A stretch of DNA of 64,000 bases from Octopus sinensis (GCF_006345805.1 NC_042997.1:120218001-120282000); one strand, 5' to 3'; positions 3,295-60,687 are shown, counted from the first letter of the stretch. The notes: generated by a model not told the origin, from the sequence alone. Numbers and translations are program-made.

Positions 3295-3417
3295 CAGTTG
3301 TGGCTGTATGGTAAGTAACTTGCTTCCCAACCACATGGTTCCGGGTTCAGTCTCACTGCGTGACACCTAGCCTCAAGCTGACCAAACTTGTGAGTGGATT
3401 TGGTAGACGGAAACAAA

Positions 3418-3503
<86 letters not shown>

Positions 3504-3695
3504 GGGTGTTTGTGTTTGTATCCCCTCTGAACATCGCTTGACAACCGATGCTGGTGTGTTTATGTCCCCGTAACTTAGCGGTTCGGCAAAAGGAACCGAT
3601 AAAATAAGTAGTAGGCTAACACAGAATAAGTCTTGGGGTCGATTTGTTCGACTAAAGGCGGTGCTCCAGTAAAACAAAAGAAAAATAAAAGAAAA
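3295..3695 (+). mobile_element. tRNA-derived SINE family A (central microsatellite)
   Basis: GTGGCTGTATGGTAAG..GGTTCCGGGTTCAGTC head, (TA)n centre and CGCTTGACAACCGATGCTGGTGTGTTTA..GGCGGTGCTCCAG tail as in 50261-50690, with two internal deletions. Confidence 0.9.
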
Positions 3696-3730
3696 GGTAT
3701 ATTAGTTTAACGCTGAGGAGGGTGAGAATG

Positions 3731-3768
3731 TCTATTACGTTTTGAACCTACGCTCTTCAACAGAAAGG
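3731..3768 (-). ncRNA. Variant hammerhead motif (CUGUUGA core), degenerate copy
   Basis: CCTTT-CTGTTGA-A-GAG-CGTAGG-TTC-AAAAC-GTA-ATAGA; same family as 27547-27584. Confidence 0.45.
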
Positions 3769-4719
3769 AACATTGAAAGATAAACAGACAGAGAATGAAA
3801 AGAGCCTTGTAAGCCCTGTTGTTCGATCGAGGGGGATTTTGGTGTGAATAAAATTTCGGAATATAGACTTGAAATAGTCAAATATGCGCACACATACACA
3901 ATCACATATAACATACGCATACAAATAAAATCCTCTTTAAATGTACTATTCTATTTCCCTCAGATCATTGGTTGTCGCCAACAATAAGAGTATTTCATCC
4001 CTGTATACAATATTCATGGAAATAGTGACGGGTGACAGGATTTGATTATTGTTACCCTGAATCCCGACTTCTTTGTGGTTGATGAATATACTTATACCTG
4101 CAGATTATTAACTGCATAAAGCATATTCGATAGCCATATAGCACTTTCTTTATTTATGTGTAACTATTTTTTGTAAGATGTGTCAACGATAAAACATGCG
4201 ATTAGAATTTATATGGTCCTCTTGTATTTAATGTTTATATTCTTTGTACTTTTTAAGTTCTTATGTATGATCGAATCCGTTTCATGAACACGGAACATCT
4301 TGAGGCTATCTACATTAATTGTAACGTACTTTTGTCACACTTACGGAAGTCGTATATGTAATTGGAAAGCAAAACTTTTTAAAAGGAATTATTGTCAAGT
4401 TTCTGATTTCCAAAGGTAATTCATTTTAAATCTCCTCGGTAAAAGCGATAATGCAATACAAAAAGTGCTTACACTTGATTCTCCACAATAGAGGGATTTT
4501 CTAATTAAAATAAATCGTATTCACTTCCTATTGATTACTCTTTATCTATTTAGTCTTTTCAGGTGATAATTGGTGCTGTTTCCTCGCCTTAATTCATCTC
4601 TAACAGAGTATAAAATGCACGAAACCCGCCACCATTTTATCCTACATTGAAAGACAAGGTTTTCAGAACCACATAACTTCATGTCATTCTTTTTTATATA
4701 AATATAAAAAAAGATATGG

Positions 4720-10972: not shown

Positions 10973-11698
10973 CAAATGACTGACGAAAGATGGAATATAC
11001 GAGAATTTATTATTAATCACGACACTTGTTTCGACACATCTAGCATCGCACATTCAATCTTCCTTCAGTCTTTTAATTCTCGTATATTCCATCTTCCGTC
11101 TTTCATTTGAGATATTGCTAGTGATCACTGTGAAAGTGACCGTGCTTTACCAGTAAGCTGCCAAGTATAAGCCATTCATTTTATTAGCCATTATGTGTGT
11201 GTGTAGGTGTGTCTATGTCAAGAAATGAAGATATGAATGCTATTGCAATTATTTTATAACTGAAGTTTGAAGGCACAGGCAATTTAGTAATTTCTGAGAA
11301 AAACTTCGCCATTCCCTTAAATTGAATATTTGTATATTTTAGTCGACACACTTTTAAAGAATAATCATTGGATAATATAAACACTATTAAACATTTCCTT
11401 GAGTACATGTATTAAAAATTCTGCTTTCATGAACAAGGAAAACGTAATCTTCAGTAAAATAATAAATAGTTAAGTACAAATTACAGATACAGGTTTAGTG
11501 GGTATTCAGGATAAAAATTATACCGTTGATGTATTCATTCATAAATATTATTTCTTAAATTTATGTCCGACGGTGAATTGGTAGAGCGAAAGATGCAGTC
11601 GAATTGCATCATAAACCGATTCAAAATTAATATACGACGTTTAAATATACGACGTTTAATATACGACGTTTTTCAAATAAATCTGAGTATTATGTTAC

Positions 11699-11733
<35 letters not shown>

Positions 11734-11769
11734 CAGATATATATACATATATATATATATGTATGTATA

Positions 11770-11960
11770 TGATTGTGTGTCTGTGTTTGTCCCCCTACCA
11801 ACGCGTGACAACCGATTTTGGTGTGTGTAAGTTCCCGTAAACTAGCGGTTCGGCAAAGGGCAACGATAGAATAGGTACTAGGCTTACAAAGAATAAGGCG
11901 GTGCTCCAGCATGGACGCAGTCAAATGACTGAAGCAAATTAAAGAAAAAAGAATAAAAGA
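11770..11960 (+). mobile_element. SINE family A, 3' half only
   Basis: GTGTTTGTCCCCC..GACAACCGAT..AGCGGTTCGGCAAA..GGCGGTGCTCCAGCATGGACGCAGTCAAATGACTGAA plus an AAAGA tail. Confidence 0.85.
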
Positions 11961-21245: not shown

Positions 21246-21555
21246 AAAATCTCGTAAAACATCGTTTACTCTCAGGACAACTCACTGAATATTCTCCAAT
21301 GTTTTCAGGGGTGTGAAACAATATTTGTGATACGTTTAACTTCTGCAAATATATAAAATCATTTAACAAACACATTTTCAACCTCAATACTAAAGATTTG
21401 GGAACAAAAAAAAAGGTAGAATGAAAGTATATGCTTTTATATCAGCTTTAAACTTGATATCTTTCTCTTTTTTTGTTTTTTCAGATAAAATAATATTTAG
21501 AATAATAAATCTACTAAACCTAGTGAATGAACTATCCTAAAGTATCTGAGAGATA

Positions 21556-21641
21556 CAGTTCTATATTTAAGAGATGAGGAATTATGTACATTATGTACAT
21601 TTGAAGGATATTTATCCTCATCTTTCTTATTGTTAATATAT
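21556..21641 (-). mobile_element. Inverted 3'-tail fragment of SINE family F
   Basis: Minus strand ATATTAACAATAAGAAAGATGAGGATAAATATCCTTCAAATGTA aligns with GTGTTAACAACAAACAAGATGAGGATAAATATCCGTCAATTGTA in the 34896-35214 copy. Confidence 0.8.
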
Positions 21642-21881
21642 GGCATATGGCATAGTGGTTAAGAGCACGGGCTACTAACCCCAAGGTTCCGAATTCGATT
21701 CCAGGCAGTGATGCGCTGAATAATAATAATAATAATGATAATAATAATAATAATAACATCAAAAAATAACTTAGGAGTGAGATCCCAGGTTCGAAATTTC
21801 CCCAAGACACCTGATGAAGGCATTGTGGGTATATCAGCCGAAATGTTTTTTAACAAACAATATGTAAATAATGTAAATAAT
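21642..21881 (+). mobile_element. tRNA-derived SINE family F carrying a hammerhead motif
   Basis: GGCATATGGCATAGTGGTTAAGAGC (A box), GAATTCGATTCC (B box), an (AAT)n linker, then GACAC-CTGATGA..GCC-GAAA at 21806-21852. The 14-bp direct repeat GTATCTGAGAGATA lies at 21542-21555 and 21882-21895. Confidence 0.9.
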
Positions 21882-22465
21882 GTATCTGAGAGATATCTGT
21901 GTAAAAACTCAAAAGAGATTTAATCATATCCCAACTTATCCAAATACATATGGTATCAGAGGATGAATAAAATTGACTGAGCCCTTTTCTATCTCTATGC
22001 AACAAAAGTAACATCTACTCATATCTTTACGTCTACACAAATCTACACTGGATAGGAAACATTATAATATTGATACTAAATCTATCACAAAACTAACAAC
22101 AATATCGAATAGCAATTTTCTACGTATTCCACGAATCTTGTTATCAACTTCATATTTATAAATCCACCCCAGATACACAATTTTCTAAATAGAATACGCT
22201 CTTACCTATTACATTAAACTTCAGCAAAATCAAATCACTACCATCACTGCACTAAATGTCAACATCATCTCAACTTTTGTATACAATTCAAAAGATTCTA
22301 AATCCCGCATTAAACCTAAAGCGAATCACCGCTGGTGAAATAAACTGTAATACACAGAAAGTTTATAAAGTCCTTAATGATAAAATTTTAGGATCCGTTC
22401 CCCCCTAATATGATTTTTTTTTTTTTGCTTTTTATACGTAGATAACTTTCCATTTTCATAAACCT

Positions 22466-22662
22466 ACTCTTTTACTCTTTTACTCGTTTCAGTCATTTGA
22501 CTGCGCCCATGCTGGGGCACCGCCTTTTAGTCTAGCAAATCGACCCCAAGATCTATTCTTTGGAAGCCTAGTACTTATTCTATCGGGCTCTTTTACCAAA
22601 CCGCTAAGTTACGGGGACGTAAACACACCAGCATCAGTTGTCAAGCGATATTGGGAGGACAA

Positions 22663-22715
<53 letters not shown>

Positions 22716-22870
22716 CGACGGATTTCTTTCAGTTTTCGTCTACCATATCCACTCACAAGGCTTTGGTCGGCTCGAGGCTATAGTAGAAGACACTTTCCCA
22801 AGGTGCCACGCAGTGGGAATGAACCCGGAACCATGTGGTTGGTAAACAACCTACTTACCACACAGCCACA
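22466..22870 (-). mobile_element. Near full-length SINE family A
   Basis: Reverse complement of the 50261-50690 element, with a (CA)n(TA)n centre and (ACTCTTTT)n tail. Confidence 0.92.
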
Positions 22871-27015: not shown

Positions 27016-27546
27016 ATATATACATATTTATGTAAGCATATAAGTTAATAAGAAAATTTACATATCTGTAGGTATATAAATATATTTTCTACTCCTGCTA
27101 CTAAATGTCGTTTGCATGTATACAAGTGCTACTTTACATGTGCTCGCTTCTAAAAATTAACACTGCCTTAAACTGTAAATTAAGACAGATGTCGAATATA
27201 GTTGCAGCTATAATAGTTGGATTTGCGTTGATGGTGAGAAAAATTAGAGGAGACATGTGAAAAGCTGTATTGATTTTATGACAGTTTTCCTATATGCAAT
27301 CGGAGCATCGAAAATTCCATAGCTGTAGGTTATTTGATAACATCATTTTCAAGAATAAAATCCAATTGACAATGTGACCTTTTCATGTTTACGAAGATAG
27401 TGATAACGTATTAAAAAATTACGTACAACCTCACGTGACGTTCATTGCACATCTCCGTATCTTCATATAAGTATATATATATATTCGTTAGTTACTGCAC
27501 GCATTTTTTTCTCTCCTTCTTTCTGTGTTTTTTTTCTCTCTGTGTA

Positions 27547-27584
27547 TCTTTCTGTTGAAGAGCGTAGGCTCGAAACGTTAAAGA
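27547..27584 (+). ncRNA. Variant minimal hammerhead motif (CUGUUGA core) inside a short PLE-like repeat (about 27485-27682)
   Basis: TCTTT-CTGTTGA-A-GAG-CGTAGG-CTC-GAAAC-GTT-AAAGA: perfect stem I (TCTTT/AAAGA), stem II (GAG/CTC), palindromic ACGT stem III, and A6>U. Confidence 0.65.
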
Positions 27585-27681
27585 CTTGTTTTATTTATAT
27601 TTCCTGAGCGCCATACTAATACAATTGTTTGTTTGTTTTCCACCTGCCTTCGTCTTTTGTCTATTTTCATAAAGCTTCCCG

Positions 27682-28686: not shown

Positions 28687-29248
28687 TTGGTTGTCCGGAA
28701 AGTTCGTGCCGATTTATAGTAGCTTACTATTCGACTCATTTTAGAACATGGTTGAGTCCATAAAATGGGATTTGTCTACACCGCCATTTAAAGCACAGTT
28801 TAAGCTATCTTTTCGTGGAAGAAGGTTTATATTCCTATAATCTGTGTTAATTCTGTAACCCTTTAAAATGGAAGATAAGAAAGTTCATTTTCGACACTTG
28901 ATGTTTGGGAACCAAAGAAAAATTGCTGCAGCTCGGATGGGATGTGTTACCCCCCTCCATATTCCCCAGATGTTGCTCCTTCGAATTTCTACTTATTCAG
29001 GTCTTTGCAGAATAGTCTTAATGGTGAAAATTTCAATTCCTTGGATGACGTAAAAAGATACCTTGATGTATTCTTTGCTATGAAACCACCTCAATTTTGG
29101 GAAGAGGGCATTTTTAAGTTAAAGGAAGGATGGAGACGCATTGTTCAACAAAATGGTTCATATTTGGTTGATTAATAATGTAATGGCAAGTATTTATTGA
29201 CCATATTCTTTCCCCTAAAAATCGGCATGAACTTTCCGAACAACCCAA
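28687..29248 (+). mobile_element. Internally deleted mariner element (about 560 bp) with TIRs and TA TSD
   Basis: TA|TTGGTTGTCCGGAAAGTTCGTGCCGATTT ... AAATCGGCATGAACTTTCCGAACAACCCAA|TA. The N-terminus MEDKKVHFRHLM (28868) is joined to the C-terminus PPYSPDVAPSNFYLFRSLQNSL..WRRIVQQNGSYLVD* (29175). Confidence 0.95.
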
Positions 29249-30515
29249 TAGTTTGCAGGCGAATTTGTACATACATGTTGTGTATAACTACAAACTGGAT
29301 ATTTATACATGCAAGGTATTAAACATATATCTATAGACACACTATATGCGCACATACACATGTACACATGCATGCCCGCATGTATATCTACACAAACACG
29401 CACTCAGACATAATGAATATTTTCTAATTAAATCGAAACGTGTTCACGTGTTCAGAGTTGTCACTCTATTTCCATACACCACTGTTTCTATTCCATCTAT
29501 TTTTGATTAATTCAAAGCCTCGGTTTGTCTTATCTCTCTTTCTTGTCCAGGAATAATAATTAGTCTTAATATTCCACCCAACTCCCTTACTCGAATCTAA
29601 GCTTTATGTATAAATATATTTTGCTTCACTGCAACTAATAAAGTGGCACCTAATTTTCTACTTCTAATAATTTAGTTCTCAGAAGATAATTACGTTATCT
29701 TGTCTGATTAATGGAAAATGGAAGCGTTCTATTTATCTTCTGAAATCAATGTCATTTCATGTTATTTTCTCTCCTGTTTTGCCTCAGGTTAAACTTGACC
29801 AAATGCGTTCCTTATATGACCAACTCGACTTCACTATGATTTTGCACTATATATCTCCCTTCTATCTTTTAAGACGTTTAGGTATCATTTGAGGTCACAT
29901 TTGCTTACCATTTCTAGGAGTTTAAGCTAAACATTAGCGACTCTGTGTGATAAATTTAGTGAAATTCAATTACGGTTTGTGTACTACTTGCTAACGACTT
30001 ATTACTTTATCAGAAACTAATATAATTAACAAACGTTTATGAATAGTTAAGTGGTAAAGATTTTGTTGAGTTTCATCTCATTTGAAGAAAGATATTTAAT
30101 TACTATTTCTGTCTTGCTCCAGCTTAAAAGAGATAAATAATCCTATAAATTCATTTCATCCTGTATATCTATTCCACATGCGTTTTTTTCTTCTTGGTCA
30201 TGGAAGAGATTCTTATGAGACGTATAGGATTGACTGTTATACTCTTAGGGAGGTAACCCATCCGATACAGAAAATCTTGCATCACAGAGAATATTTTACT
30301 AAAAGAACCGTAGAGCCATGTTGGAATGTTAAACCTGGCGATGAATTAAGTTTCCCAGCCTATAAACCGATTTGTTCTACGAAGTCATGGCACAAGACAC
30401 ATATCTTTTAAGGAACACAGTGGGTTCGATGTCGGAATCATGCAGATCCAAAGCGAAACTGTTTAACCACACTGACATGTCTGCGATCACTAAGAAATTT
30501 TATAGATAATCAATA

Positions 30516-34173: not shown

Positions 34174-34895
34174 TATAGAAGTCAAATACTTTTGGTGTGT
34201 TGGGATATTCGACATTTTCTTCAAGTCCCATTCCTTCTAATTGAGTACGTCTGTTCATACAGGTCTTCCAATCATGATCATACGGCAATTATAGGCCTTC
34301 TACAATATTATGTTTATCCTAACATTCCCCTTCTATCATTTATAGCTAATGTTTGATATTTTTTTCTGAGAAGCACAAGCAGATTGTTTGACGATGAACA
34401 GACTCCTCAAGTAGGTCCGTATTAATTTATTCTTTCTGTGATTAATCATGTGATTACCACATAAATTTTATTCTTTTATCTTATATTTCCCTTCTTTCTT
34501 TGCTTTGTATATATGTATCATTTGCGTAAAGTATTATGGATATCTTAATTTCCTGATATAATATTAAGAAATTCGAAGTTGTTATGTATGTTATATGTGT
34601 TGTATGTTTTGTTACTGTCTGGCAGTCTTTTTGTTGTTCGTGTTTTTAATAAGACGGACAAGTTGCATAAATGGTTAGGGATTTGGATACACATTTTATA
34701 TGGTCATTTTCATAGGAAACATTGAAATTTAGGAAAGCATCTATGATCACTGATATATTAATATGCATTAAAGAAATTTTTTATGTATTTTAGTTAGGGA
34801 AATTATGGAAAGCCTATAGTGAAATGAATTTAAAATCTTCCCGACATTGAATTGTCAGAGAAATTGATAGAAGTATGCTGCTAATTATTAGATAC

Positions 34896-35047
34896 GTTAT
34901 TTACAATTGACGGATATTTATCCTCATCTTGTTTGTTGTTAACACAACGTTTTGGCTGATATAACTTCCAGCCTTTATCAGGTGTCTTGGGGAAATTTCG
35001 AACCTGGGTTTTCATTCCTAAGGTATTTTTCGATGTTGTTGATGTTC

Positions 35048-35125
<78 letters not shown>

Positions 35126-35214
35126 TTCAGGTCACTGCCTGGAATTGAACTCGGAATCTTGGGGTTAGTAGCCCGCTCTCTTAACCACTACGCCAACCAC
35201 TACGCCATATGCCC
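34896..35214 (-). mobile_element. tRNA-derived SINE family F, second copy with hammerhead motif
   Basis: Minus strand GGGCATATGGCGTAGTGG (AACCACTACGCC duplicated), GAGTTCAATTCC, an (ACT)n(AAT)n linker, and GACAC-CTGATAA-A-GGCTG..CAGCC-AAAAC-GTT-GTGTT at 34941-34986. Confidence 0.9.
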
Positions 35215-35893
35215 TGTGGCATATATGGAAATGTAATTATTAAATGTTGACAAAACCATGGATGAATATGCTACTTTATGCCATTCAACAATTTACTCAT
35301 TATATTGTTCAATATAAAGACAGAATTATGAATTCAGGTTTTCAATAAATTTAGGTGTTATATTCACCAAAATCCCTATGGATGTGGAACCATTCAAAGA
35401 AATTAAGAGAAACTAGAATTAAGCGTTTAATAGTTAATCGAAACTTTCGTTGAATGTCATATCTAGAGAAAAGCATTCATCAGTAAATAGCTCTTCTCTA
35501 TCGGGAACTGATTGGAATATTTATCAGTAAAATATAGGAAGAGCAATTAGATATACAAGATTGTAGTAGAAGTAATGAATCAATTTAAACAAATAATATA
35601 TGATAATAGAACTGATATTAAAAAAAAAAAAACTGTAATATCAAAGGTGGAGATTATTTCTGTAACCGACAGACTAAATGCAGGACAACACATTTTTTTA
35701 ATCATTTATGATCAAACTAGCAAGGAAGTGTATGAGAAAATATGGACAAGCAATGTACTTTGCGATGTGGGATATGAAGTTCTGATGACGACTACTTTAC
35801 TCCGATTATTGAGTCTTCCTCAAGAATCATATCTATCAATCTATCTCTCTATGTATGTATCTATCTATCTATATCTATATATATATGTATGTA

Positions 35894-39143: not shown

Positions 39144-40549
39144 CATTGGCAGAAAACTGTACAGTTAATAGTATGTATAAGGGCTGTGTTCAGTTTCATG
39201 TTTTCCAAAATAATCTTTTACGTGCGTGTGTGCTTGTGTGTGTTTATATGTGTGTGTATGTGTGTGTGTGTGCATGAGTGGAAAAGCGAGACCTATAATT
39301 GTTGTCTAGGGGAATGTCTCTTAGCAGTTTCCATATATCACAAACATTACTATTCAAAAATTCCAAATTCGATCTCGTCTACAATTAAGAAAACACCTTT
39401 TTTTTCTACAAACTTGAAAAAAATCAAAACGATTTTCCGTCGATTTCGACGTTTACTTCTCAGACAATTTATTGAATTAACGATATGCTCTGTAAATCAA
39501 TACATGTACTTGTAGAATGCGTACAGTCCTGTGGCATGACAGCATGGTTCTTATACTCATTTCTAAGCCTAATCTTTTGAATATTAATATGTATCGTGAA
39601 ACGCGAGCGATAAGATCAGTTAACCGTAATTATCCTGGGAGAGGAATTAAAGCAACGCTGTAGTGCACCGCTTATGCTTTCATATAGAATTACATACATA
39701 AAGAAATGAGATATCTGATTCAGTAACAAATAGCAATGATGTTAAACATTCATGTGGCGACGACTGATAGAACCAATAGATAACATATCAACCTCATCAT
39801 GAACATCTGTCTGAAAATAGCAACATCATATTGCATAACTATGAGAAATGGTGACTGGGCTAATATATATTACAATACAATCGTGGAAAGAGTAATTTTC
39901 AAGATACGTTACAATGCACAGTGATTTGTAAATCATACTATGCACAATAATGTGTAAATCATAATGTGTAAATCATAATATACTGGTAGAGTATGTTTGT
40001 CAAACCAATACTGAAAATGCAAACATAACACAAAGATCTGAAGTTGGGCAAAACATTTCACATAACAAATGAAAACACTTGGACATTTCTTTCGCAAATG
40101 TTGAGGGTTTGTGTTAAACATCATCTCTAGAGAATTAACAAGCAAACTGTAATTATTAATGTTATAATTTTGGAACAGTTTTAGAACTAGCTACCATAGT
40201 ACCATTCGTGTTCTGGCGCATATGAAAAAGACCACGGCTAATCAGGCTATCATTGATAAAGTTACGGAAGGTAGAGCATTATTTGTAAACATTGTGGATG
40301 CAATACACGTACAGAAAAAGCTTGCCAAGAAGAAATAAACAAGCGTTATGATCTTCGTCTTGTATCAGTTTGCCTGGTTTATATCGCAACAGCAACGGAT
40401 TATCCAAGAAATCACATACATAACGATAGAATGCATATTAGCTAAGTGTCTCAGGAGATTAAAAACTACTACCACTGCTACTACTGCTGCCACCGCCATA
40501 CGTCTCCCAATCAATAAGACTGTTCGAAAAAAAAAATATATATAGGGAG

Positions 40550-40725
40550 AATTCACAGAAAAAACAAAAGACGATGACAGGCGGTGTAGACAACAAACAG
40601 ACGTAATAGTTTAACGTTCGGGAAGTGAAAAGAGTCTTTAACGTTTCTAGCCTACGTTCTTGCACAGAAAGGAACAGAAAGAAACAAGGAGAGAAAATAA
40701 GGAAAGTGTAGTGGCTAGCGATATA
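40550..40725 (-). mobile_element. Short PLE-pLTR-like repeat with a degenerate variant hammerhead (40635-40672)
   Basis: CCTTT-CTGTGCA-A-GAA-CGTAGG-CTA-GAAAC-GTT-AAAGA; body homologous to 27485-27682 and 45070-45260; (TA)n on both flanks. Confidence 0.65.
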
Positions 40726-44200: not shown

Positions 44201-45069
44201 TATATACTGTTTTATATTTATATGTAAGGTATTTGATGTATGAGGTATTTGACTTTTTGAGGTTTTTGTTTTTGTGTATTAACACAAATAAACAATGTGT
44301 AAAATTCGAAGAACCAGATCTCTGAAATGTATGCTAATGTACGACCGTTTCCTAGCAATTACTTTCAAATACAGTAATATTTCATACTAAATTATTGTTC
44401 AGGAACTAAATCTTTTAGATTACATGAAAATATCCTGAAAATTTGAAACGTTTCTTCCCAATAATTCTTAATAAATGGTATTAGTTTGGCTAATGAGTAT
44501 TTATAGATCACATCACATGAATGTTCAAATTTCGCGATGTAAAGTCAGTTCAGAAATTTCGTATATTTAATATACGTACATTTCTTTAGCTTTAAATAGA
44601 ATTCGCTTTCAGTTTAAAAGTACTTCATTGATGAGGAAATTAGAATCGATTGAATCGTTAAATGTCAATGTTCATAGATGTCTTATTCTGTCTTTTGTTT
44701 CTTTGGCGCTGTTCACGAAGAGGAAATCTAAATTTACTTCAATATACTTGTTAAGAAGACTGTCCAATGGAGCAGTGATAGAATGCGTTTGAAATAGAAA
44801 CGTAATGAAAAGGAAATCAAACAATAATTTGATATGTCCAGTAAAGTTGATAGAATATGATCAGGAAAGAGACGGTTTAGTGTAGGGTTTAATGGCTACA
44901 TTACGGTAGAGCGTGGAATAGATCGATATGGTCAGAAATAAAATGGTTATGGAAACAGTACAAGGGATATATTGTTGATCAACGGATAAAACATGACTTC
45001 AAGTAGTCAAGATTAACACATACAACTACTTTATATACATATATATATATGCGTGTATGTATGTATAGA

Positions 45070-45260
45070 GGAAACTTCACGAGAAAAACAAAATGTGAAG
45101 GCAGGTGGTTAAAAAAAAAACAAATGTATTAGTATAGCGCTCGGGAATTGAAAACATATTTAACGTTTCGAGCCTACGCTCTTCCACAGAAAGAAACAAG
45201 GAGAGAGAAACTGTGTGTAGTGACTACCGATCTTTCATGGCGAATGCCGGACAGAAGGGT
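45070..45260 (-). mobile_element. Short PLE-pLTR-like repeat with variant hammerhead (45157-45194)
   Basis: TCTTT-CTGTGGA-A-GAG-CGTAGG-CTC-GAAAC-GTT-AAATA; homologous to the 27547 copy. Confidence 0.7.
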
Positions 45261-46057
45261 CATACAAGAGAGCTAAGAAGTAGGGGAGATAACAAAGTAG
45301 TAGTGATCCCAAAACGAAGGTGCTCGTGTGTGTAAGAGGGGCTCAAAACTTTAAATACTTTTTCAATTCCCGAGCATTATACTAATACATCTGTTTGTTT
45401 TCTACACAACTTGTGTTCGAATTTTTTCCTGAATTCTCCCTATATATATATATATATATATACGCGCATATGTATGTATGTATACTTCTGTTTATTCCTT
45501 CACAATGTATGTATACGTATGCATATATATATATATTAATGTCTGTGTGCATGTGTGTACGCGTGTATGTATGCGTTCATGTGTGTATGCATGTATATAT
45601 AGCTCACGGATATTACAAAAAAATGCGCACTTATAACTTTACCAACAACTTAAGAATAAGGTATATTGTTTTCTTTCCATTTTTTTAAACTTATTTTGGC
45701 TTGGAACTTCCCCACATGGGGGAAAGATTGAGAATCAGAAATAATAAATAAATATCACGAACAATATTATTCCACCTCGTACTAATTATGTTCTCGATCA
45801 ACCTATGAATCATGTTTATTGCAGTACATAAATATATTGCAGCGCTGTTCATATAGTTGCTAAAAAAAGCGCGTAAAACAAACTAAATATACTATTTCAG
45901 TTCAATGAAATAACTTATATATAATGTGACCGCGTGTGTGTCGTTGGCGATTTCTTTCCTCCGTCTTCCCTTCCTTGGATCTTTCCGTTTCCTACGTTTC
46001 TGGCAAAGAGCTCCGCTCGAAACTTCAAATCCTTTGTGTTTTCATATTTGGATTAAC

Positions 46058-46440: not shown

Positions 46441-47606
46441 AAAGGAAATCCGTTGGAAACACAAAAACAGAACAGAGGCGGAGCAAAAAACAAATCGAAC
46501 TGTGCTCCTAAGAGCCCATGGCGAAACTGTTTATCAGTGTATGTTGAGAACCGGTGGCTGAAGAATTCAACGGGTCAGGCATCGGTCAATCATGTGGGTG
46601 AGGGTGTATAGATGTTCTTTGTGACGAGAGAATAAAGTTCTGACTATTTAAGGAATATTGGATGTTTTATAAGGGGCGAGAAAAAATCTACTTAGAGACG
46701 TGTGTGTGTGTATACTGTTCTATATATGTTGTGTGTTGGCGTAGGGGTAGAAAACATTTTTTGTGTACGTGTGTGCGTTGATCGTTCGGCTGTCAGTGGC
46801 TACTGCCGTGATAACCGTTGGGTGGCAGAAAGAAAAAAAAAAATAAAAAATATATATATATTATGTTTTATGTGTGTGTGTGTTCATCTGAGCCTGCCTT
46901 GTCAAGGAAACCCCCCGCTGTGAGAAAACCAAGCCCCGTTTGTCTTACAGGAGTAATTCCCCTTGCAGTGGTTAATCGTAGATATCTTAAAGGCTATTTC
47001 AGAATTTGTTACCAAGGGCTATGGGTGCCGGTACTATTTATAAACGCTATTTAAAGGCCAGGTAAGTGTAACGCCGCCAATGGGGCATCGAAAAGCCGAC
47101 TGTAAGAGCCCGTTTACCATCCGGCCTCTGGCAAACAAAATATGGAAGAGTTCGGAGACACAAAGGTTGCACTGTCTTCTGCCCCTATCAAATGGGATGG
47201 GAGGGCCACCGACAAAATTGACCATTCCAGCCTATAGCTTAAGTTCGCATCCTTCAGTCGCCATATTAGCTTACTGAGTCCCGTGGTCTGGCGCTTGTTC
47301 ACGTCCGGAAAAGTTGCGTAATGGTTGGAGACACGCAAAGACAATCTTGAGGATGATGCCCCTACATAAGTGAAGATCTGAGTCCGTGTAAACCTTGCAT
47401 TGGTAGACGGCGTTTTTGATCTTGGAGTTCGCCGACGTGAATCTTAATCTGCTAGGATTAGTTTCTGAAATTAGAACTGCGTTCCTAAAGGTGTCAGGTA
47501 ATGCTGAATAAGTGCTATACACAGACCATAGTTAAGTTCCAGATTCTATCTATAAATGCTCTAATATCTATACAGCTTTGTTTTTTATCTTATTATGCAA
47601 AAAATG

Positions 47607-50260: not shown

Positions 50261-50690
50261 TATAGGTGCAGGAGTGGCTGTGTGGTAAGTAGCTTGCTTA
50301 TCAACTATAAGGTTCCGAGTTCAGTTCCACTGCGTGGCACCTAGGGCAAGTGTCTTCTACTATAGCCTCAAGCCGACCAAAGCCTTTTGAGTGGATTTGG
50401 TAGACAGAAACTGAAAGAAGCACGTCGTATATATATATGTGTGTGTGTGTGCGTGTGTGTGTATGTATCTATATCTGTGTTTGTCCCTCCAACATCGCTT
50501 GACAGCCGATGCTGGTGTGTTTACGCCCCCGTAACTTAGCGGTTCGGCAAGGCAGATCGATAGAATAAGTACTAGGCTTACAAAGAATAAGTCCTGGATT
50601 CGATTTGCTCGACTAAATGCGGTGCTCTAGCATGTCCGCAGTAAAATGACTGAAATAATTAAAAGAATAAAAGAATAAAAGAATAAAAGA
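50261..50690 (+). mobile_element. Full-length SINE family A (reference copy)
   Basis: ATAGGTGCAGGAGTGGCTGTGTGGTAAG head, GAGTTCAGTTCC B box, (TG)n centre and (AAAGAAT)n tail. Confidence 0.93.
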
Positions 50691-52389: not shown

Positions 52390-52870
52390 TTTAAAAAGTT
52401 TGTTTTGTCTTCACACACAGCTTATTGGTCTCGCCACCGTTGAACGAGACCAATATACTTTGAGGTGTTATTGCATGGGGCTGAGACATGGCGAACAACA
52501 TTTAAGTCAAATAAGCAAATACAATCATTCATCAACAGATGCTTGCGTGGTATACTTAAAATTAGATGGCCCGAACACATAAGCAATATGGAGCTATGGC
52601 AAAGAGCAAATCAAGCTCGTTTAGGGAGCAAATATTTAAGAAAAAGTGGAAGCACAATTAGAAAAAACACACCAAATGTAGCGAAAAGTGCTTTACAGTG
52701 GAATCCGGATGGATATAGAAAGAAAGGTAGGCCTAAAAACTCGTGGCGTAGATGAACATAAAAGGAACTAGAGAAAGGGAACATTCTTGGCAGAGTATAA
52801 GTACAGAAGCGAAAACTTATGCGACATGGAATCCAACTATAAGTGGACTACACTCCGCATTGGAGGGTTA
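52390..52870 (+). mobile_element. RTE-clade LINE ORF C-terminal fragment
   Basis: LLHGAETWRTT..FINRCLRGILKIRWPEHISNMELWQR..ALQWNPDG.RKKGRPKNSWRR contains the RTE hallmarks LLYGxETW, RCLRxIL.I.W and GRP..W. Confidence 0.9.
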
Positions 52871-53340: not shown

Positions 53341-53517
53341 TTCCTTTATTCTTTTGTACCTTTACTTGTTTCAGTCATTTGACTGTGGCCATCCTGGAGC
53401 ACCGCCTTTAGTTGAGCAAATCTTATTATTTGTAAGCCTAAATTACGGGAACGTAAACACACCAGCATCGGTCGTCAAGCGATATTGGGGGAACAAACAC
53501 AGACATACAAACATATA

Positions 53518-53559
<42 letters not shown>

Positions 53560-53732
53560 TATATACGACGGGATTCTGTCAGTTTCCGTCTACAAAATCC
53601 CACTCAAAAGGCTTCGGTCGGCCCGAAGCTATAGAGGAAGACACTTGACCAAGGTGCCACGCAATGGGACTGAACCTGGAACCATGTGGTTGATATGCAA
53701 GATACCTAACACACAGTCACTCCTACGCCTAT
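53341..53732 (-). mobile_element. SINE family A whose 5' end abuts a U6 copy
   Basis: Minus strand starts ATAGGCGTAGGAGTGACTGTGTG, the same start as the 50261 copy. It has an internal deletion in the tail. Confidence 0.9.
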
Positions 53733-53733
53733 T

Positions 53734-53813
53734 AAAAAAAATATGGAACGCTTCACGATTTGCGTGTCATCCATGAACAGGGACCATGCTAATCTCTGTA
53801 TCGTTCCAATTTT
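53734..53813 (-). pseudogene. U6: 5'-truncated U6 spliceosomal snRNA copy
   Basis: AAAATTGGAACGATACAGAGATTAGCATGGTCCCTGTTCATGGATGACACGCAAATCGTGAAGCGTTCCATA+T8 matches metazoan U6 from about nt 25 to the 3' end (ACAGAGA box, AGC triad). The 5' stem-loop is missing and AGA is deleted after the box. Confidence 0.95.
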
Positions 53814-54339
53814 TAAAATATTTACACAATATTTGTGTATTCCTTCTATGTTAAATTATATTTATATACAAAACTCCAGCATTTGGTGTAAATAGTAACT
53901 AGTTTCATTTCATTTCGATGACATTTCAAAGAATTTGGTTCAATGGGGTAAACAGTACTCACATTTGCTTTTTCACCGTAGGAATCAACAGGTACCTCAG
54001 AGGAACCTTCAATACATCATATATTTGTATATGTGAGTGTGAGTGTGTATGTGGGTGTGTAAATTGTATGTGTGTGCTCACGTGCATATGTGTTTGTGCA
54101 TGTGTATGTGTATATGTATGTATATTTATACCCATATACATCTATATGTTTATACATGTATGTATAAACATATACAGACACATATGCAAACACATGTGTA
54201 TTCTTCTGTGTTTATGTGTGTATGTGTGCGTGCGTGAGTGTGTGTGAGTGAGTGTGTGTTTGTGTGTGTGTGTGCGTGCATGTGGATGTGCATGCGAGTC
54301 CATGCAGCTCGATCCCACATCGCCACAAATGCTGCCAAG

Positions 54340-55800
54340 AAGTGCCACAAATAGTAATCAATGAAATCGAAAATACCCTCACTCTAATGAAAATAGACAA
54401 AATTCCCGGTGATAAATGTTAAGTTGCAGAGGTGAATAGATGCGGAAAATGCTCGTTCTATGTTTCAATCGCTATCAGAAGTAGAATATGATATCGTCGA
54501 CGCGGAAAGAAGCAAATACCTATCTAGTTCATAAAAAGGGTGATAAAGATTTGAAAAACCCATCACCCTAAATTCTTCTTGGCTCACCTGTACCAGCTGT
54601 TTCTCAATAGTCTAAAAAAACACTTTGACGTCCAACAAGCAAGAGAGCAAGCAGATTTCTATAAGATCTATAGTATAATAGATAATGTATTCACTCTAGC
54701 ATATCTCGTAAAACGGGCGAACGAATACAAGCTTCCTTTGTGCATTGCATTTGTTGATTATGAAAAGGCCTTCCATAGCGTGGAGATGAACGCAGTGTTG
54801 AAATGTCTGGAAAAGCAAGATATTGCAGCTAAATACAGCAAACTGCTCAGAGATGCGAACACTGAATGCACAACAGATCTATCTTTGGTATCTCTACCAG
54901 TAAGGATCACAGCGGAAAAGGGTGTCAAGCAAGAAGATACCATCTCTCCAAAACATTTGGTCTCATGTCTAGAAATGGTCATCAAGGACATCGATGGGCA
55001 GGTGGTGTGAAAATCAATGGCAAGCAAGTAACACACCTCCGATTCGCAAATGACATTGTATTCGTCTCTCAAACCACAGGCTTGCTGCAGACCATGCAGT
55101 TAGAGCTGAGCACTCAGAGCTTAGAAGTAAGACTTAAGATAAAGCAATATCTATGTGGTCCGAAATGTAGCACATAGAGATGGGAAGCGATGAGATTGAG
55201 AAGGGAAAATAGTACATCTACCACGGGCACACATTAAATATGCGCTGAAATATAGATGCTGAAATTTTAAGAAGAATAACGCCAAGATAGCCGCTATTTA
55301 ATAAAAGACCTGATGCGAACAAAGTTAGACAAAGCCATACGTGTCAGACTCCTTAATAGCACTGTCCTACATGTGCGCATACACGCAAGTGAGACGTGGC
55401 CTACTACGAAAAGGATAGAACATTGATTGGCTTTAGCGCAAAGAGCCATGGAAAATTCCTTACTAAGAATATCCCAAAGATAGCACATTAGAAAAAAATT
55501 AATTCGAGAATGGAACGATGTGAACGAAGTGATCGCAAAGTACCGAAGTCAAAAGATCCGCTTGGGCGGACATGTCGTAAGGTTCACTGAACGCAGATGG
55601 ACCCGTGCAATGGCCAACTGGCATCTAAGAGATCGGAAAAGGCCACTTGAACGGTCTTAAAGACGATGGGGAGACAATGTAGTGACACAATTTAGGTCGA
55701 AGCGAAAAAGAATGGTGCAATTAAAACAAAATTGGAAGCGTATTGTGGACAGCGGTGTGCGACGACATCTGATTGTCTTGACGATATTGCGCAACTATGA
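54340..55800 (+). mobile_element. Decayed RTE-clade LINE reverse transcriptase region
   Basis: REQADF..IDNVFTL..EYKLPLCIAFVDYEKAFHSV..KGVKQEDTISPK..HLRFANDIV (the catalytic FADD is mutated to FAND), with a later ASETW motif. Frameshifts and stops are present. Confidence 0.93.
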
Positions 55801-60007: not shown

Positions 60008-60284
60008 TTTACTCTTTTACTTTATTATTGTTTCAGTCATTTGCCTGTGGCCATGCTGGAGCACCGCCTTTAGCCGAGCAAATCGAACCCAGGACTTATT
60101 CTTTGTAAGCCTAATACTTATTCTGTCGGTCTATTTTGCCGAACCGCTAAGTTACGAGGATGTAACATACCAGCATCGGTTGTCAAGCGATGTTGGGGGA
60201 AACAGACACACAAACGTATAAATTACTTATATACATACATGTATATACATACTTATATACACATACTTATATACATACATGTAC

Positions 60285-60315
<31 letters not shown>

Positions 60316-60354
60316 TATACTTATATACATACATACTTATATACATACATGTAC

Positions 60355-60419
<65 letters not shown>

Positions 60420-60527
60420 ATCACGTGACCGACCAGACCATCAGATGTTGTTACACATCGCTGGTCACAATGTGTTCGCATTGCTTTAGCCTTCGAATTA
60501 CGCCACCCCGCTGGCTAAGCGAGCAGG

Positions 60528-60571
<44 letters not shown>

Positions 60572-60687
60572 ACGTCAAGCTTCTTTCACTTTCCGTCTAC
60601 CAAATCTAATCACAAGGCTTCGGTTGGTCCGAGGCTATAGTAGAAGACACTTACCCAAGGTGCCACGCAGTGGGACTGAAACCGGAA
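60008..60687 (-). mobile_element. SINE family A with expanded centre and a nested insertion
   Basis: Tail at 60008-60210 and head half at 60575-60687 (first ~40 nt missing), separated by microsatellite and the 60413-60530 insert. Confidence 0.88.
60413..60530 (-). mobile_element. 5'-truncated SINE family C nested in the (TA)n of a family A copy
   Basis: TCACGTGATCACGTGACCGACCAGACCATCAGATG..GAGCAGGCCAA matches the 3' end of the 12649-12959 copy. Confidence 0.88.

What the first reader, a model, noticed from the sequence alone, without database searches (positions are those of the whole stretch)
21542..21895. Inverted SINE-F tail fragment starts at the predicted ribozyme cleavage site, within one 14-bp direct repeat
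Seen: GTATCTGAGAGATA (21542-21555 and 21882-21895) brackets an inverted tail piece (21556-21641) joined head-to-head with the forward SINE. Read on the minus strand, the piece starts ATATTAACAA.., aligning to GTGTTAACAA.., the first bases after the predicted cut, within about 2 nt. It contains the AGATGAGGATAAATATCC segment that the forward copy lacks, and a 9-bp hairpin stem (21572-80/21615-23). Established: PLE insertions often show inverted partial pLTRs, and twin priming also produces inversions. Inference: this may be a genomic record of a reverse-transcribed 3' cleavage product, i.e. evidence that the ribozyme cut in vivo.
Basis: partly seen in the sequence, partly recalled or inferred. 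Interest (0 to 1): 0.72.

Follow-up and report, generated by a model that had tools for sequence, protein, structure and literature searches.

The report
Inverted SINE tail at ribozyme cut
A short mobile element with a hammerhead-ribozyme motif inserted, in what looks like an octopus genome, next to a back-to-front copy of its own tail that begins at the predicted ribozyme cut; the layout is typical of Penelope-like retrotransposition, and one case cannot show that the ribozyme cut in the cell.

Summary
GTATCTGAGAGATA occurs only at 21542-55 and 21882-95. It brackets an 85-nt minus-strand module (21556-21640) joined head-to-head to a full-length tRNA-headed SINE (21641-21881). The module matches the tail of the only other family copy (35214-34894, minus strand) at 83%. 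That match starts within one base of the predicted hammerhead scissile bond.

The ribozyme call is reasonable. The motif has the published hallmarks of Penelope-like-element (PLE) minimal hammerheads. However, neither copy in the window is intact, and Rfam finds no hammerhead.

The architecture is the known PLE insertion signature: an inverted 5'-truncated copy, a full copy, one target-site duplication, and an extension at one end only. The two tails differ although the duplication is perfect. This points to two RNA templates and rules out single-RNA twin priming.

The inference that the ribozyme cut in vivo rests on one breakpoint, a coincidence of roughly 1-2% before allowing for selection. 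A second hammerhead-like family in the window forms the same kind of composite (45071-45439), and its inverted copy starts 29 nt upstream of its cut. No further family copies could be retrieved, so the genome-wide test was not possible.

Verdict: an ordinary PLE-type composite insertion of a ribozyme-bearing SINE. The cleavage reading is plausible (about 0.3) but unproven.

The parts
21542..21555 (.). Left copy of the target-site duplication GTATCTGAGAGATA (18 nt with 1 mismatch from 21538)
21556..21580 (-). 25-nt extension at the outer (3') end of the inverted tail. 21562-21580 is the reverse complement of the first 26 nt of the piece (foldback arm). 21556-21561 (CAGTTC) is unassigned. It is a candidate PLE-type optional 'tail'.
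   Evidence: PMC3846280, PMC8557442, PMC11167929
21581..21640 (-). Inverted SINE-F tail, from the predicted hammerhead cut (at 21639/21640) to the 9-mer repeats (ATGTACATA x2). 83% identical to the copy-2 tail.
21641..21715 (+). tRNA-like head of the forward SINE (box A TGGCATAGTGG, box B-like TTCGATTCC). Not called as a tRNA.
21716..21765 (+). Internal (AAT)n microsatellite and linker of the forward SINE
21806..21847 (+). Hammerhead-like motif of the forward copy: GACAC (helix I 5' strand), CTGATGA 21811-17, unpaired A 21818, GGC..GCC helix II (3 bp here), GAAA 21840-43, TGTT. The predicted cut is 21847|21848. The helix I 3' strand is lost (TTTT).
   Evidence: PMC4209133
21848..21881 (+). Shortened tail of the forward copy (34 nt, (ATGTAAATA)x2). 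It lacks the GATGAGGATAAATATCC block. A T6 run at 21846-21851 sits on the cut site.
21882..21895 (.). Right copy of the target-site duplication
34894..35214 (-). Second SINE-F copy, used as reference. Helices I (GACAC/GTGTT), II (GGCTGG/TCAGCC) and the ACGT palindrome are intact. The core carries two substitutions (CTGATAA, AAAA). Predicted cut 34946|34945.
35215..35245 (-). 19 extra nt between the copy-2 head and its 5' target-site duplication (35234-45, partner 34882-93, 12 nt with 1 mismatch). It contains a short inverted copy of the head start.
45071..45439 (.). Comparison case: a second hammerhead-like family (X). Full copy 45232-45071 (-) lies head-to-head with partial copy 45326-45439 (+), which starts 29 nt upstream of its predicted cut. 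Flanked by a ~35-nt low-complexity direct repeat (45032-66 / 45445-79).

Best explanation
This is one retrotransposition event of a non-autonomous, tRNA-headed SINE whose 3' domain carries a Penelope-like-element (PLE) type minimal hammerhead, probably mobilised by a PLE enzyme.

**Proposed mechanism**
1. A staggered break about 14 bp wide was made in the target DNA.
2. Both 3'-OH ends primed reverse transcription on the 3' tails of two separate SINE RNAs.
3. The bottom-strand cDNA ran to the 5' end of a full-length RNA and gave the forward copy.
4. The top-strand cDNA started about 25 nt further downstream, which produced the one-sided extension. It ended after about 60 nt of tail, at or within 1 nt of the hammerhead scissile bond.
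5. The two cDNAs were joined head-to-head, and gap repair produced the 14-bp duplication.

**Shown:** the anatomy, the duplication, the homology, the position of the breakpoint, and the difference between the two tails.

**Inferred:** the PLE enzyme, priming on both strands, and the reason the short cDNA ended where it did. On the last point I put about 0.3 on a self-cleaved 3' RNA fragment as the template. The remainder goes to an ordinary 5' truncation or template switch that coincides with the site.
For: - **Duplication.** The 14-mer is unique to the two flanks (for the 18-nt extension).
- **Inverted homology.** The piece matches the family tail at 83-84%, starting at copy-2 position 269|270, which is the predicted cut.
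- **Forward copy.** It is full length.
- **Two templates.** The two tails differ: GTAAATAAT x2 against GTACATAAT x2, plus a 12-24 nt indel. The flanking duplication is 14/14 identical, so these differences predate insertion and indicate two templates.
[quoted passage not shown] A descriptor allowing up to 2 core mismatches finds 2 sites in the window against 0.05 per shuffle.
- **Compensatory helices.** The second hit belongs to an unrelated family with entirely different helix I and II sequences that still pair.
- **Published PLE structure.** An inverted 5'-truncated copy abuts the full copy, the whole unit is flanked by one duplication, and a roughly 30-bp 'tail' is present at one end only (PMC3846280, PMC8557442).
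- **Published PLE biochemistry.** A purified PLE protein nicks and extends both DNA strands and starts reverse transcription at two internal sites (PMC11167929).
- **Second composite.** A similar head-to-head composite exists in the same window.
Against: - No PLE reverse transcriptase sharing this tail was found in the window. The only GIY-YIG-like open reading frame (47037-47531) has no adjacent RT and no Pfam hit.
- Neither SINE-F copy has an intact ribozyme.
- Rfam reports no hammerhead, even at E up to 10.
- The extension is 25 nt, not 30-40. It is a foldback of the piece's own start, so it may arise differently from the PLE 'tail'.
- The family consensus rests on two full copies only.
Confidence: 0.65

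Rival explanations
1. First reader's specific reading. The template of the inverted copy was the 3' product of hammerhead self-cleavage, probably in a two-RNA dimer held by the retrotransposition complex. The cDNA then ran off at the new 5'-OH end, so the locus records in vivo ribozyme cleavage.
For: - The breakpoint lies at the predicted scissile bond within about 1 nt. The chance of this is about 3/333 to 7/333 if 5' ends were uniform along the element (arithmetic).
- Minimal PLE hammerheads are thought to act as dimers through the palindromic helix III (PMC4209133), and two templates are indicated here.
- A PLE hammerhead cleaves only when its protein is present (PMC11167929).
- An RT stall at helix II would be expected about 8-9 nt upstream of the cut, not at it (inference).
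Against: - It is a single case, and it was flagged because it coincided with the site.
- The bases after the cut read AUAUU in the piece. They cannot pair with the GACAC helix I strand seen in both full copies.
- The other composite in the window breaks 29 nt upstream of its cut, although that family's core is non-canonical (U at position 6).
- In canonical PLEs the inverted pLTR (PLE pseudo-LTR) extends well upstream of the hammerhead (PMC3846280).
- No RNA-seq reads started at the hammerhead site, and ribozyme mutants inserted normally in vitro (PMC11167929).
Confidence: 0.3
2. Two independent insertions. An older, 5'-truncated minus-strand tail fragment was already present, and a forward SINE later landed beside it.
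For: PLE endonucleases are reported to prefer their own sequences and AT-rich DNA, which favours nested or adjacent insertions (PMC11167929). The two tails come from different source sequences.
Against: The 14-bp duplication brackets both pieces together. No duplication flanks the forward SINE alone. The forward head abuts the inverted piece with 0-2 unassigned bases.
Confidence: 0.07
3. The composite was copied as a unit. A master locus already had the inverted tail upstream of the SINE, and a read-through transcript of the whole unit was retrotransposed.
For: One duplication surrounds the whole unit. PLE-type partial tandems and inverted units are known to be transposition-competent (PMC3846280).
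Against: The only other family copy in the window lacks the module. No other copy of the junction exists in the window.
Confidence: 0.1
4. L1-style twin priming on a single RNA, or an assembly or rearrangement artefact, produced the inversion.
For: Twin priming gives head-to-head inversions inside one duplication (established knowledge). Palindromic structures are prone to assembly error.
Against: Twin priming yields non-overlapping segments of one RNA. Here both segments contain the post-cut tail and differ in sequence. An artefact would not create a perfect flanking 14-bp duplication.
Confidence: 0.04

Closest known systems
Canonical Penelope-like element insertion units (e.g. Pen2a_Av of Adineta vaga; Naiad/Penelope structures)
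   Same: An inverted 5'-truncated copy lies directly upstream of a direct copy. The whole unit sits inside one short target-site duplication (8-10 bp there, 14 bp here). An optional roughly 30-bp extension is present at one outer end only. Palindromes occur at or near the junctions (PMC3846280, PMC8557442).
   Different: Here the mobilised unit is a roughly 240-330 nt tRNA-headed SINE with no ORF and no direct pLTR (PLE pseudo-LTR). The inverted part is only 60-85 nt and stops at the hammerhead cut, whereas inverted pLTRs normally include the hammerhead and about 150-200 nt upstream of it.
Minimal hammerhead ribozymes of metazoan PLEs (Cervera and de la Pena 2014, PMC4209133)
   Same: CUGAUGA/GAAA boxes, an unpaired base between positions 9 and 10.1, a G10.1-C11.1 pair, a 6-bp helix II, a 5-bp helix I, no helix III loop, and a palindromic ACGU suited to dimer formation.
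   Different: No single copy in the window carries all features at once. Activity is untested. The motif sits in a pol III-type SINE rather than in a pLTR.
Anolis Poseidon PLE (PAc) reconstituted in vitro (PMC11167929)
   Same: The protein nicks and extends both DNA strands, which explains inverted copies. Reverse transcription starts at two internal sites 85-92 nt downstream of the hammerhead cut, which explains the one-sided 'tail'. Here the cut-to-duplication distance of the inverted module is 85 nt.
   Different: In PAc, cleavage was not needed for insertion, and no RNA ends were seen at the cut. No protein partner is identified here.
Sm-alpha SINE-like elements of Schistosoma with hammerhead ribozymes (Ferbeyre et al. 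1998; from my own knowledge, also cited in PMC4209133)
   Same: A short pol III-type retroposon carrying a type I hammerhead that needs dimerisation.
   Different: Sm-alpha carries a canonical hammerhead with loop-loop contacts. Its taxon and sequence are different, and no link between a breakpoint and the cut site has been described for it to my knowledge.
L1 twin priming (Ostertag and Kazazian 2001; from my own knowledge)
   Same: A head-to-head inversion inside one target-site duplication, with the second nick used as a primer.
   Different: Twin priming uses one RNA and gives non-overlapping segments. Here the tail is present twice, in two sequence versions.
Metazoan non-LTR retrozymes (PMC7229834; bioRxiv 10.64898/2026.07.22.740005)
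   Same: Non-autonomous hammerhead-bearing repeats, thought to depend on PLEs.
   Different: Retrozymes occur as tandem arrays and act through circular RNAs. SINE-F copies here are dispersed single units with a tRNA-like head.

Membership tests
PLE-type minimal hammerhead ribozyme | Catalytic boxes CUGANGA and GAAA | tested here: inconclusive
   The forward copy has both boxes (21811-17, 21840-43). Copy 2 has CTGATAA and AAAA, two substitutions.
PLE-type minimal hammerhead ribozyme | [quoted passage not shown] | tested here: met
   An A precedes GGC..GCC in both copies. These features are listed in PMC4209133.
PLE-type minimal hammerhead ribozyme | Helix I of 4-5 bp and a longer helix II | tested here: inconclusive
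   Copy 2 has helix I GACAC/GUGUU (5 bp) and helix II of 6 bp. The forward copy has lost helix I and keeps only 3 bp of helix II.
PLE-type minimal hammerhead ribozyme | Palindromic 15.2-16.2 allowing a dimeric helix III | tested here: met
   ACGU in copy 2 and AUGU (wobble pairs) in the forward copy. The dimer fold of a hybrid sequence pairs these positions.
PLE-type minimal hammerhead ribozyme | Self-cleavage after H17 | not testable with these tools
   Needs in vitro transcription of dimeric constructs, with and without the PLE protein.
Rfam hammerhead families (types I, II, III, HH9, HH10) | Match to a curated covariance model | tested here: not met
   No hammerhead hit at the gathering threshold or at E up to 10. 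This is expected for motifs without a helix III hairpin.
PLE-type composite insertion | Inverted 5'-truncated copy abutting the 5' end of a direct copy, all inside one target-site duplication | tested here: met
PLE-type composite insertion | Optional 30-40 bp 'tail' extension at one end only | tested here: inconclusive
   A 25-nt extension is present only at the outer end of the inverted copy (21556-80). Its sequence is a foldback of the piece's own start, so its origin is ambiguous.
PLE-type composite insertion | An autonomous PLE (RT plus GIY-YIG endonuclease) sharing the 3' module | tested here: not met
   No other tail homolog is present in the window. The GIY-YIG-like ORF at 47037-47531 has no RT next to it.
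tRNA-derived SINE | tRNA-like head with A and B boxes, short length, multiple dispersed copies with target-site duplications | tested here: met
   The boxes are visible by eye in both copies. There are two copies with 14-bp and 12-bp duplications. Neither ARAGORN nor Rfam calls a tRNA.
L1-type twin priming | Inverted and direct segments are non-overlapping parts of one RNA | tested here: not met
   Both segments contain the post-cut tail and differ in sequence.
Non-LTR retrozyme | Tandem head-to-tail arrays of hammerhead units | tested here: not met
   Only dispersed single copies were found.

The most novel reading that the evidence does not exclude
The inverted tail is a DNA fossil of an in vivo hammerhead cleavage product. 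In a two-RNA retrotransposition complex the minimal hammerheads of two SINE RNAs dimerised and one RNA was cut. Its 3' fragment, still bound at the reverse-transcription start site, was then copied to its new 5'-OH end. If this is general, 5' truncation and inversion breakpoints of hammerhead-bearing SINEs and PLEs would pile up at GUU|. That would give the first genomic read-out of PLE ribozyme activity in cells.
Probability: 0.3. Interest if true: 0.7.

Novelty: new member of a known kind. Interest (0 to 1): 0.4.

Why it matters
What PLE hammerheads do in vivo is an open question. They are conserved, yet they cleave poorly in vitro. Insertion in a reconstituted system does not need them, and no RNA ends were found at the cut site (PMC4209133, PMC11167929).

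A genomic pile-up of truncation or inversion breakpoints at the scissile bond would be cheap, orthogonal evidence that cleavage happens during retrotransposition. SINEs that borrow the PLE 3' module would be the best-powered place to look, because they are short and numerous.

This locus alone does not provide that evidence. It does define the test and one positive example. It also documents a tRNA-headed SINE with a PLE-type hammerhead tail and PLE-type insertion anatomy in what appears to be a cephalopod genome.

Tried and rejected
**Searches for more family copies (all empty)**
- Exact-pattern scans of metagenome contigs and GTDB genomes, two patterns each, gave 0 hits.
- Scans of viral contigs gave 0 hits and one chance 18-mer.
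- A protein-word search with the open reading frame that runs through the SINE tail found no candidates.
- Sequence strings from the SINE were not found in the paper library.

**Attempts to reach the host genome through proteins**
- The RTE-type RT at 54579-55177 only finds relatives at 56% identity or less, in turtles and nematodes.
- A frameshift-corrected GIY-YIG-like ORF found nothing in the word-indexed search.
- The exhaustive search gave 307 weak relatives. The best is Octopus sinensis XP_029649382.
- Two O. sinensis loci (41 kb) share 11 repeats with the window at 72-83% identity but contain no SINE-F or family X.
- Two long ENA contigs are unrelated to the window.
- Three window ORFs are not on record.

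**Other negative results**
- A model of the empty site (the two flanks joined) has no paralogue in the window or the fetched loci.
- Rfam finds no hammerhead or tRNA.

**Ideas rejected**
- The GTATCT at the start of the 14-mer being SINE tail rather than duplication. The left flank shares 17 of 18 bases, including non-tail sequence.
- A MITE reading of the 85-nt foldback. Its asymmetric centre is 83% identical to the SINE tail.
- An RT stall at RNA structure as the cause of the breakpoint. The predicted stall points lie elsewhere.
- The 19-nt filler of copy 2 being an inverted tail start. Only 4 nt match.

Full report
**1. What is in the sequence**

The 14-mer GTATCTGAGAGATA occurs exactly twice in the 64-kb window, at 21542-55 and 21882-95. 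This holds even with one mismatch allowed (0.02 expected). The repeat extends to 18 nt with one mismatch.

Between the two copies lie two pieces.
- **Forward SINE, 21641/2-21881 (plus strand).** It has a tRNA-like head with A and B boxes, an (AAT)n microsatellite, a conserved 3' domain and a short tail.
- **Inverted module, 21556-21640 (minus strand, 85 nt).** It abuts the SINE head directly.

The only other family member in the window is a full copy on the minus strand at 35214-34894. It is 87% identical to the forward copy in the head and 86% in the 3' domain.

**2. The inverted piece and its start**

Read on the minus strand, 21640->21582 aligns to positions 269-327 of copy 2 (nhmmer E 5.7e-5 with the tail query; blastn 84% over 56 nt, E 1e-11; 83% in a global alignment). 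In copy 2 the sequence ..CAGCCAAAACGTT|GTGTTAACAA.. places the predicted cut between 34946 and 34945, which is position 269|270. The homology therefore begins at -1/0 relative to the cut.

Two caveats apply.
- Base 21640 could equally be the base that precedes the SINE head, since copy 2 also has an A there.
- The first five bases read TATAT against TGTGT.

The AGATGAGGATAAATATCC block is present in the piece and in copy 2, but missing from the forward tail.

**3.

Only 21581-21640 is recognisable tail. The outer 25 nt (21556-80) are absent from the other two tails. Nineteen of them (21562-80) are the reverse complement of the first 26 nt of the piece, with two small gaps.

The 85-nt RNA therefore folds into a long hairpin (-18.4 kcal/mol, z -4.6, none of 200 shuffles as stable).

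**4. Is the ribozyme real?**

Rfam reports no hammerhead, at the gathering threshold or at E up to 10. This is expected for motifs that lack a helix III hairpin.

Against the published description of PLE minimal hammerheads (PMC4209133), the motif has every non-trivial hallmark:
- an unpaired base between positions 9 and 10.1;
- a G10.1-C11.1 pair;
- a 6-bp helix II;
- a 5-bp helix I;
- a palindromic ACGU in place of helix III, followed by U17.

No single copy is intact, however.
- The forward copy has a perfect core (CTGATGA...GAAA) but has lost the helix I 3' strand and most of helix II.
- Copy 2 has all helices, but carries G8A and G12A in the core.

A descriptor allowing up to two core mismatches finds two sites in the window, against 0.05 per dinucleotide shuffle. 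The second site belongs to an unrelated repeat, family X, at 27486-27680, 45232-45071, 40722-40546 and 3799-3694. Family X has the same architecture (TCTTT-CTGTTGA-A-GAGC-GTAG-GCTC-GAAACGTT|AAAGA). Its helix sequences are completely different but still pair.

That compensatory pattern across two families argues that the fold was selected in the progenitors. Family X carries U at core position 6 in all copies, so it is probably inactive.

**5. What the architecture is**

PLE insertions are described as follows (PMC3846280, PMC8557442):
- a full copy preceded by an inverted 5'-truncated copy;
- the whole unit inside one short duplication;
- an optional extension of about 30 bp at one outer end only;
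- frequent palindromes.

A purified PLE protein nicks and extends both DNA strands. It starts reverse transcription at two internal sites 85-92 nt downstream of the hammerhead cut, and the sequence between those sites corresponds to the 'tail' (PMC11167929).

The locus fits this pattern point by point. There is one 14-bp duplication, an inverted truncated copy, a 25-nt one-sided extension, and 85 nt from the cut to the duplication.

Copy 2 has a 12-nt duplication with one mismatch, and 19 extra nt at its 5' junction.

Family X supplies a second head-to-head composite in the same window. The full copy at 45232-45071 faces the partial copy at 45326-45439 (72-nt inverted arms, 83% complementary). 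The pair is flanked by a roughly 35-nt low-complexity direct repeat.

**6. One template or two?**

The forward tail and the inverted tail differ in both 9-mer units (GTAAATAAT against GTACATAAT) and by a 12-24 nt indel. The flanking duplication is still 14/14 identical. The differences therefore predate insertion, which means two RNA molecules were copied.

This excludes single-RNA twin priming. It fits a complex that primes on both nicks.

**7. Does the breakpoint show in vivo cleavage?**

*For:*
- The coincidence is tight. It corresponds to about 1-2% if 5' ends were uniform over roughly 333 nt.
- Two RNAs fit a dimeric ribozyme.
- Cleavage of a PLE hammerhead is protein-assisted (PMC11167929).
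- A structure-induced RT stall would be expected elsewhere.

*Against:*
- It is one case, chosen because it coincides with the site.
- The post-cut bases in the piece (AUAUU) would not pair with the helix I strand seen in both full copies.
- The family X composite breaks 29 nt upstream of its cut.
- Canonical inverted pLTRs (PLE pseudo-LTRs) include the hammerhead (PMC3846280).
- In the one system studied, no RNA ends mapped to the cut, and ribozyme mutants inserted normally (PMC11167929).

I put the cleavage reading at about 0.3.

**8. What could not be done**

No further SINE-F copies could be obtained. The host is probably an octopod.
- The best relative of a GIY-YIG-like ORF in the window is an Octopus sinensis protein.
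- Two O. sinensis loci share 11 interspersed repeats with the window at 72-83% identity.

Those 41 kb contain no SINE-F, and nothing else from the genome was retrievable. The joined flanks have no paralogue. The genome-wide breakpoint test and the empty-site test therefore remain the decisive steps.

**9. Verdict**

- The structure is an ordinary PLE-type composite insertion of a hammerhead-bearing SINE, a new member of known kinds.
- The claim of a cleavage fossil is plausible and readily testable, but it is not established.

Noticed in passing
window 27486-27680 (+), 45071-45232 (-), 40546-40722 (-), 3694-3799 (-): A second short repeat family ('X') with a minimal-hammerhead-like motif CTGT[TG]GA-A-GAGC-GTAG-GCTC-GAAACGTT|AAAGA. 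Core position 6 is U in every copy. The copies end in or next to (TA)n microsatellites, a known PLE target preference.
   Followed up: partly
window 45032-45479: Family X full copy (45232-45071, -) lies head-to-head with a partial copy (45326-45439, +) that starts 29 nt upstream of the predicted cut. About 95 nt of unassigned spacer lies between them, and a roughly 35-nt low-complexity direct repeat flanks the pair.
   Followed up: partly
window 21846-21851: A T6 run sits on the predicted cut site of the forward SINE-F copy. It would act as a pol III terminator upstream of the tail, so this copy is probably a dead end for further retroposition.
   Followed up: no
window 35183-35206 and 35215-35233: Copy 2 of SINE-F has a 12-nt tandem duplication inside its box A region. 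It also has 19 extra nt between its head and its target-site duplication, and these include a short inverted copy of the head start (CCATATATGCC / GGCATATGG).
   Followed up: partly
window 53737-53840 (-): A U6 snRNA match (72 bits, E 2.9e-16) has a 3-nt deletion in the ACAGAGA-box region and a poorly paired 5' stem. It is likely a U6 pseudogene or retrocopy.
   Followed up: no
window 47037-47531 (-): Frameshifted GIY-YIG-like ORF (..AVYQCKV.. / ..FTYVGASSSRLSLRVSNH.. / ..CNLCVSE..). It has no Pfam hit and 307 weak relatives. The best is Octopus sinensis XP_029649382 (57% over 54 aa). No RT lies adjacent.
   Followed up: partly
window 54579-55177 (+) and 52465-52755 (+): Decayed RTE-type LINE fragments (RVT_1, E 1e-7). 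The closest proteins, at 49-56% identity, come from turtles and nematodes.
   Followed up: partly
window 28869-29251 (+): A mariner-like transposase fragment, 83% identical at the DNA level to Octopus sinensis loci L001 and L002.
   Followed up: partly
window 3300-3690, 11696-11897, 22512-22869, 50274-50630, 53394-53720, 60056-60616 and others: An abundant tRNA-headed SINE family ('S') with an internal (TA)n microsatellite, at least 7 copies in the window. One copy lies about 620 bp to the right of the studied locus. The head / microsatellite / 3' domain layout is the same as in SINE-F.
   Followed up: partly
whole window: The window is about 33% GC and very rich in microsatellites: (TA)n, (TATG/CATA)n, (TGC/TAC)n and (AAT)n. 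No convincing host exon was seen among ORFs of 55 aa or more.
   Followed up: no
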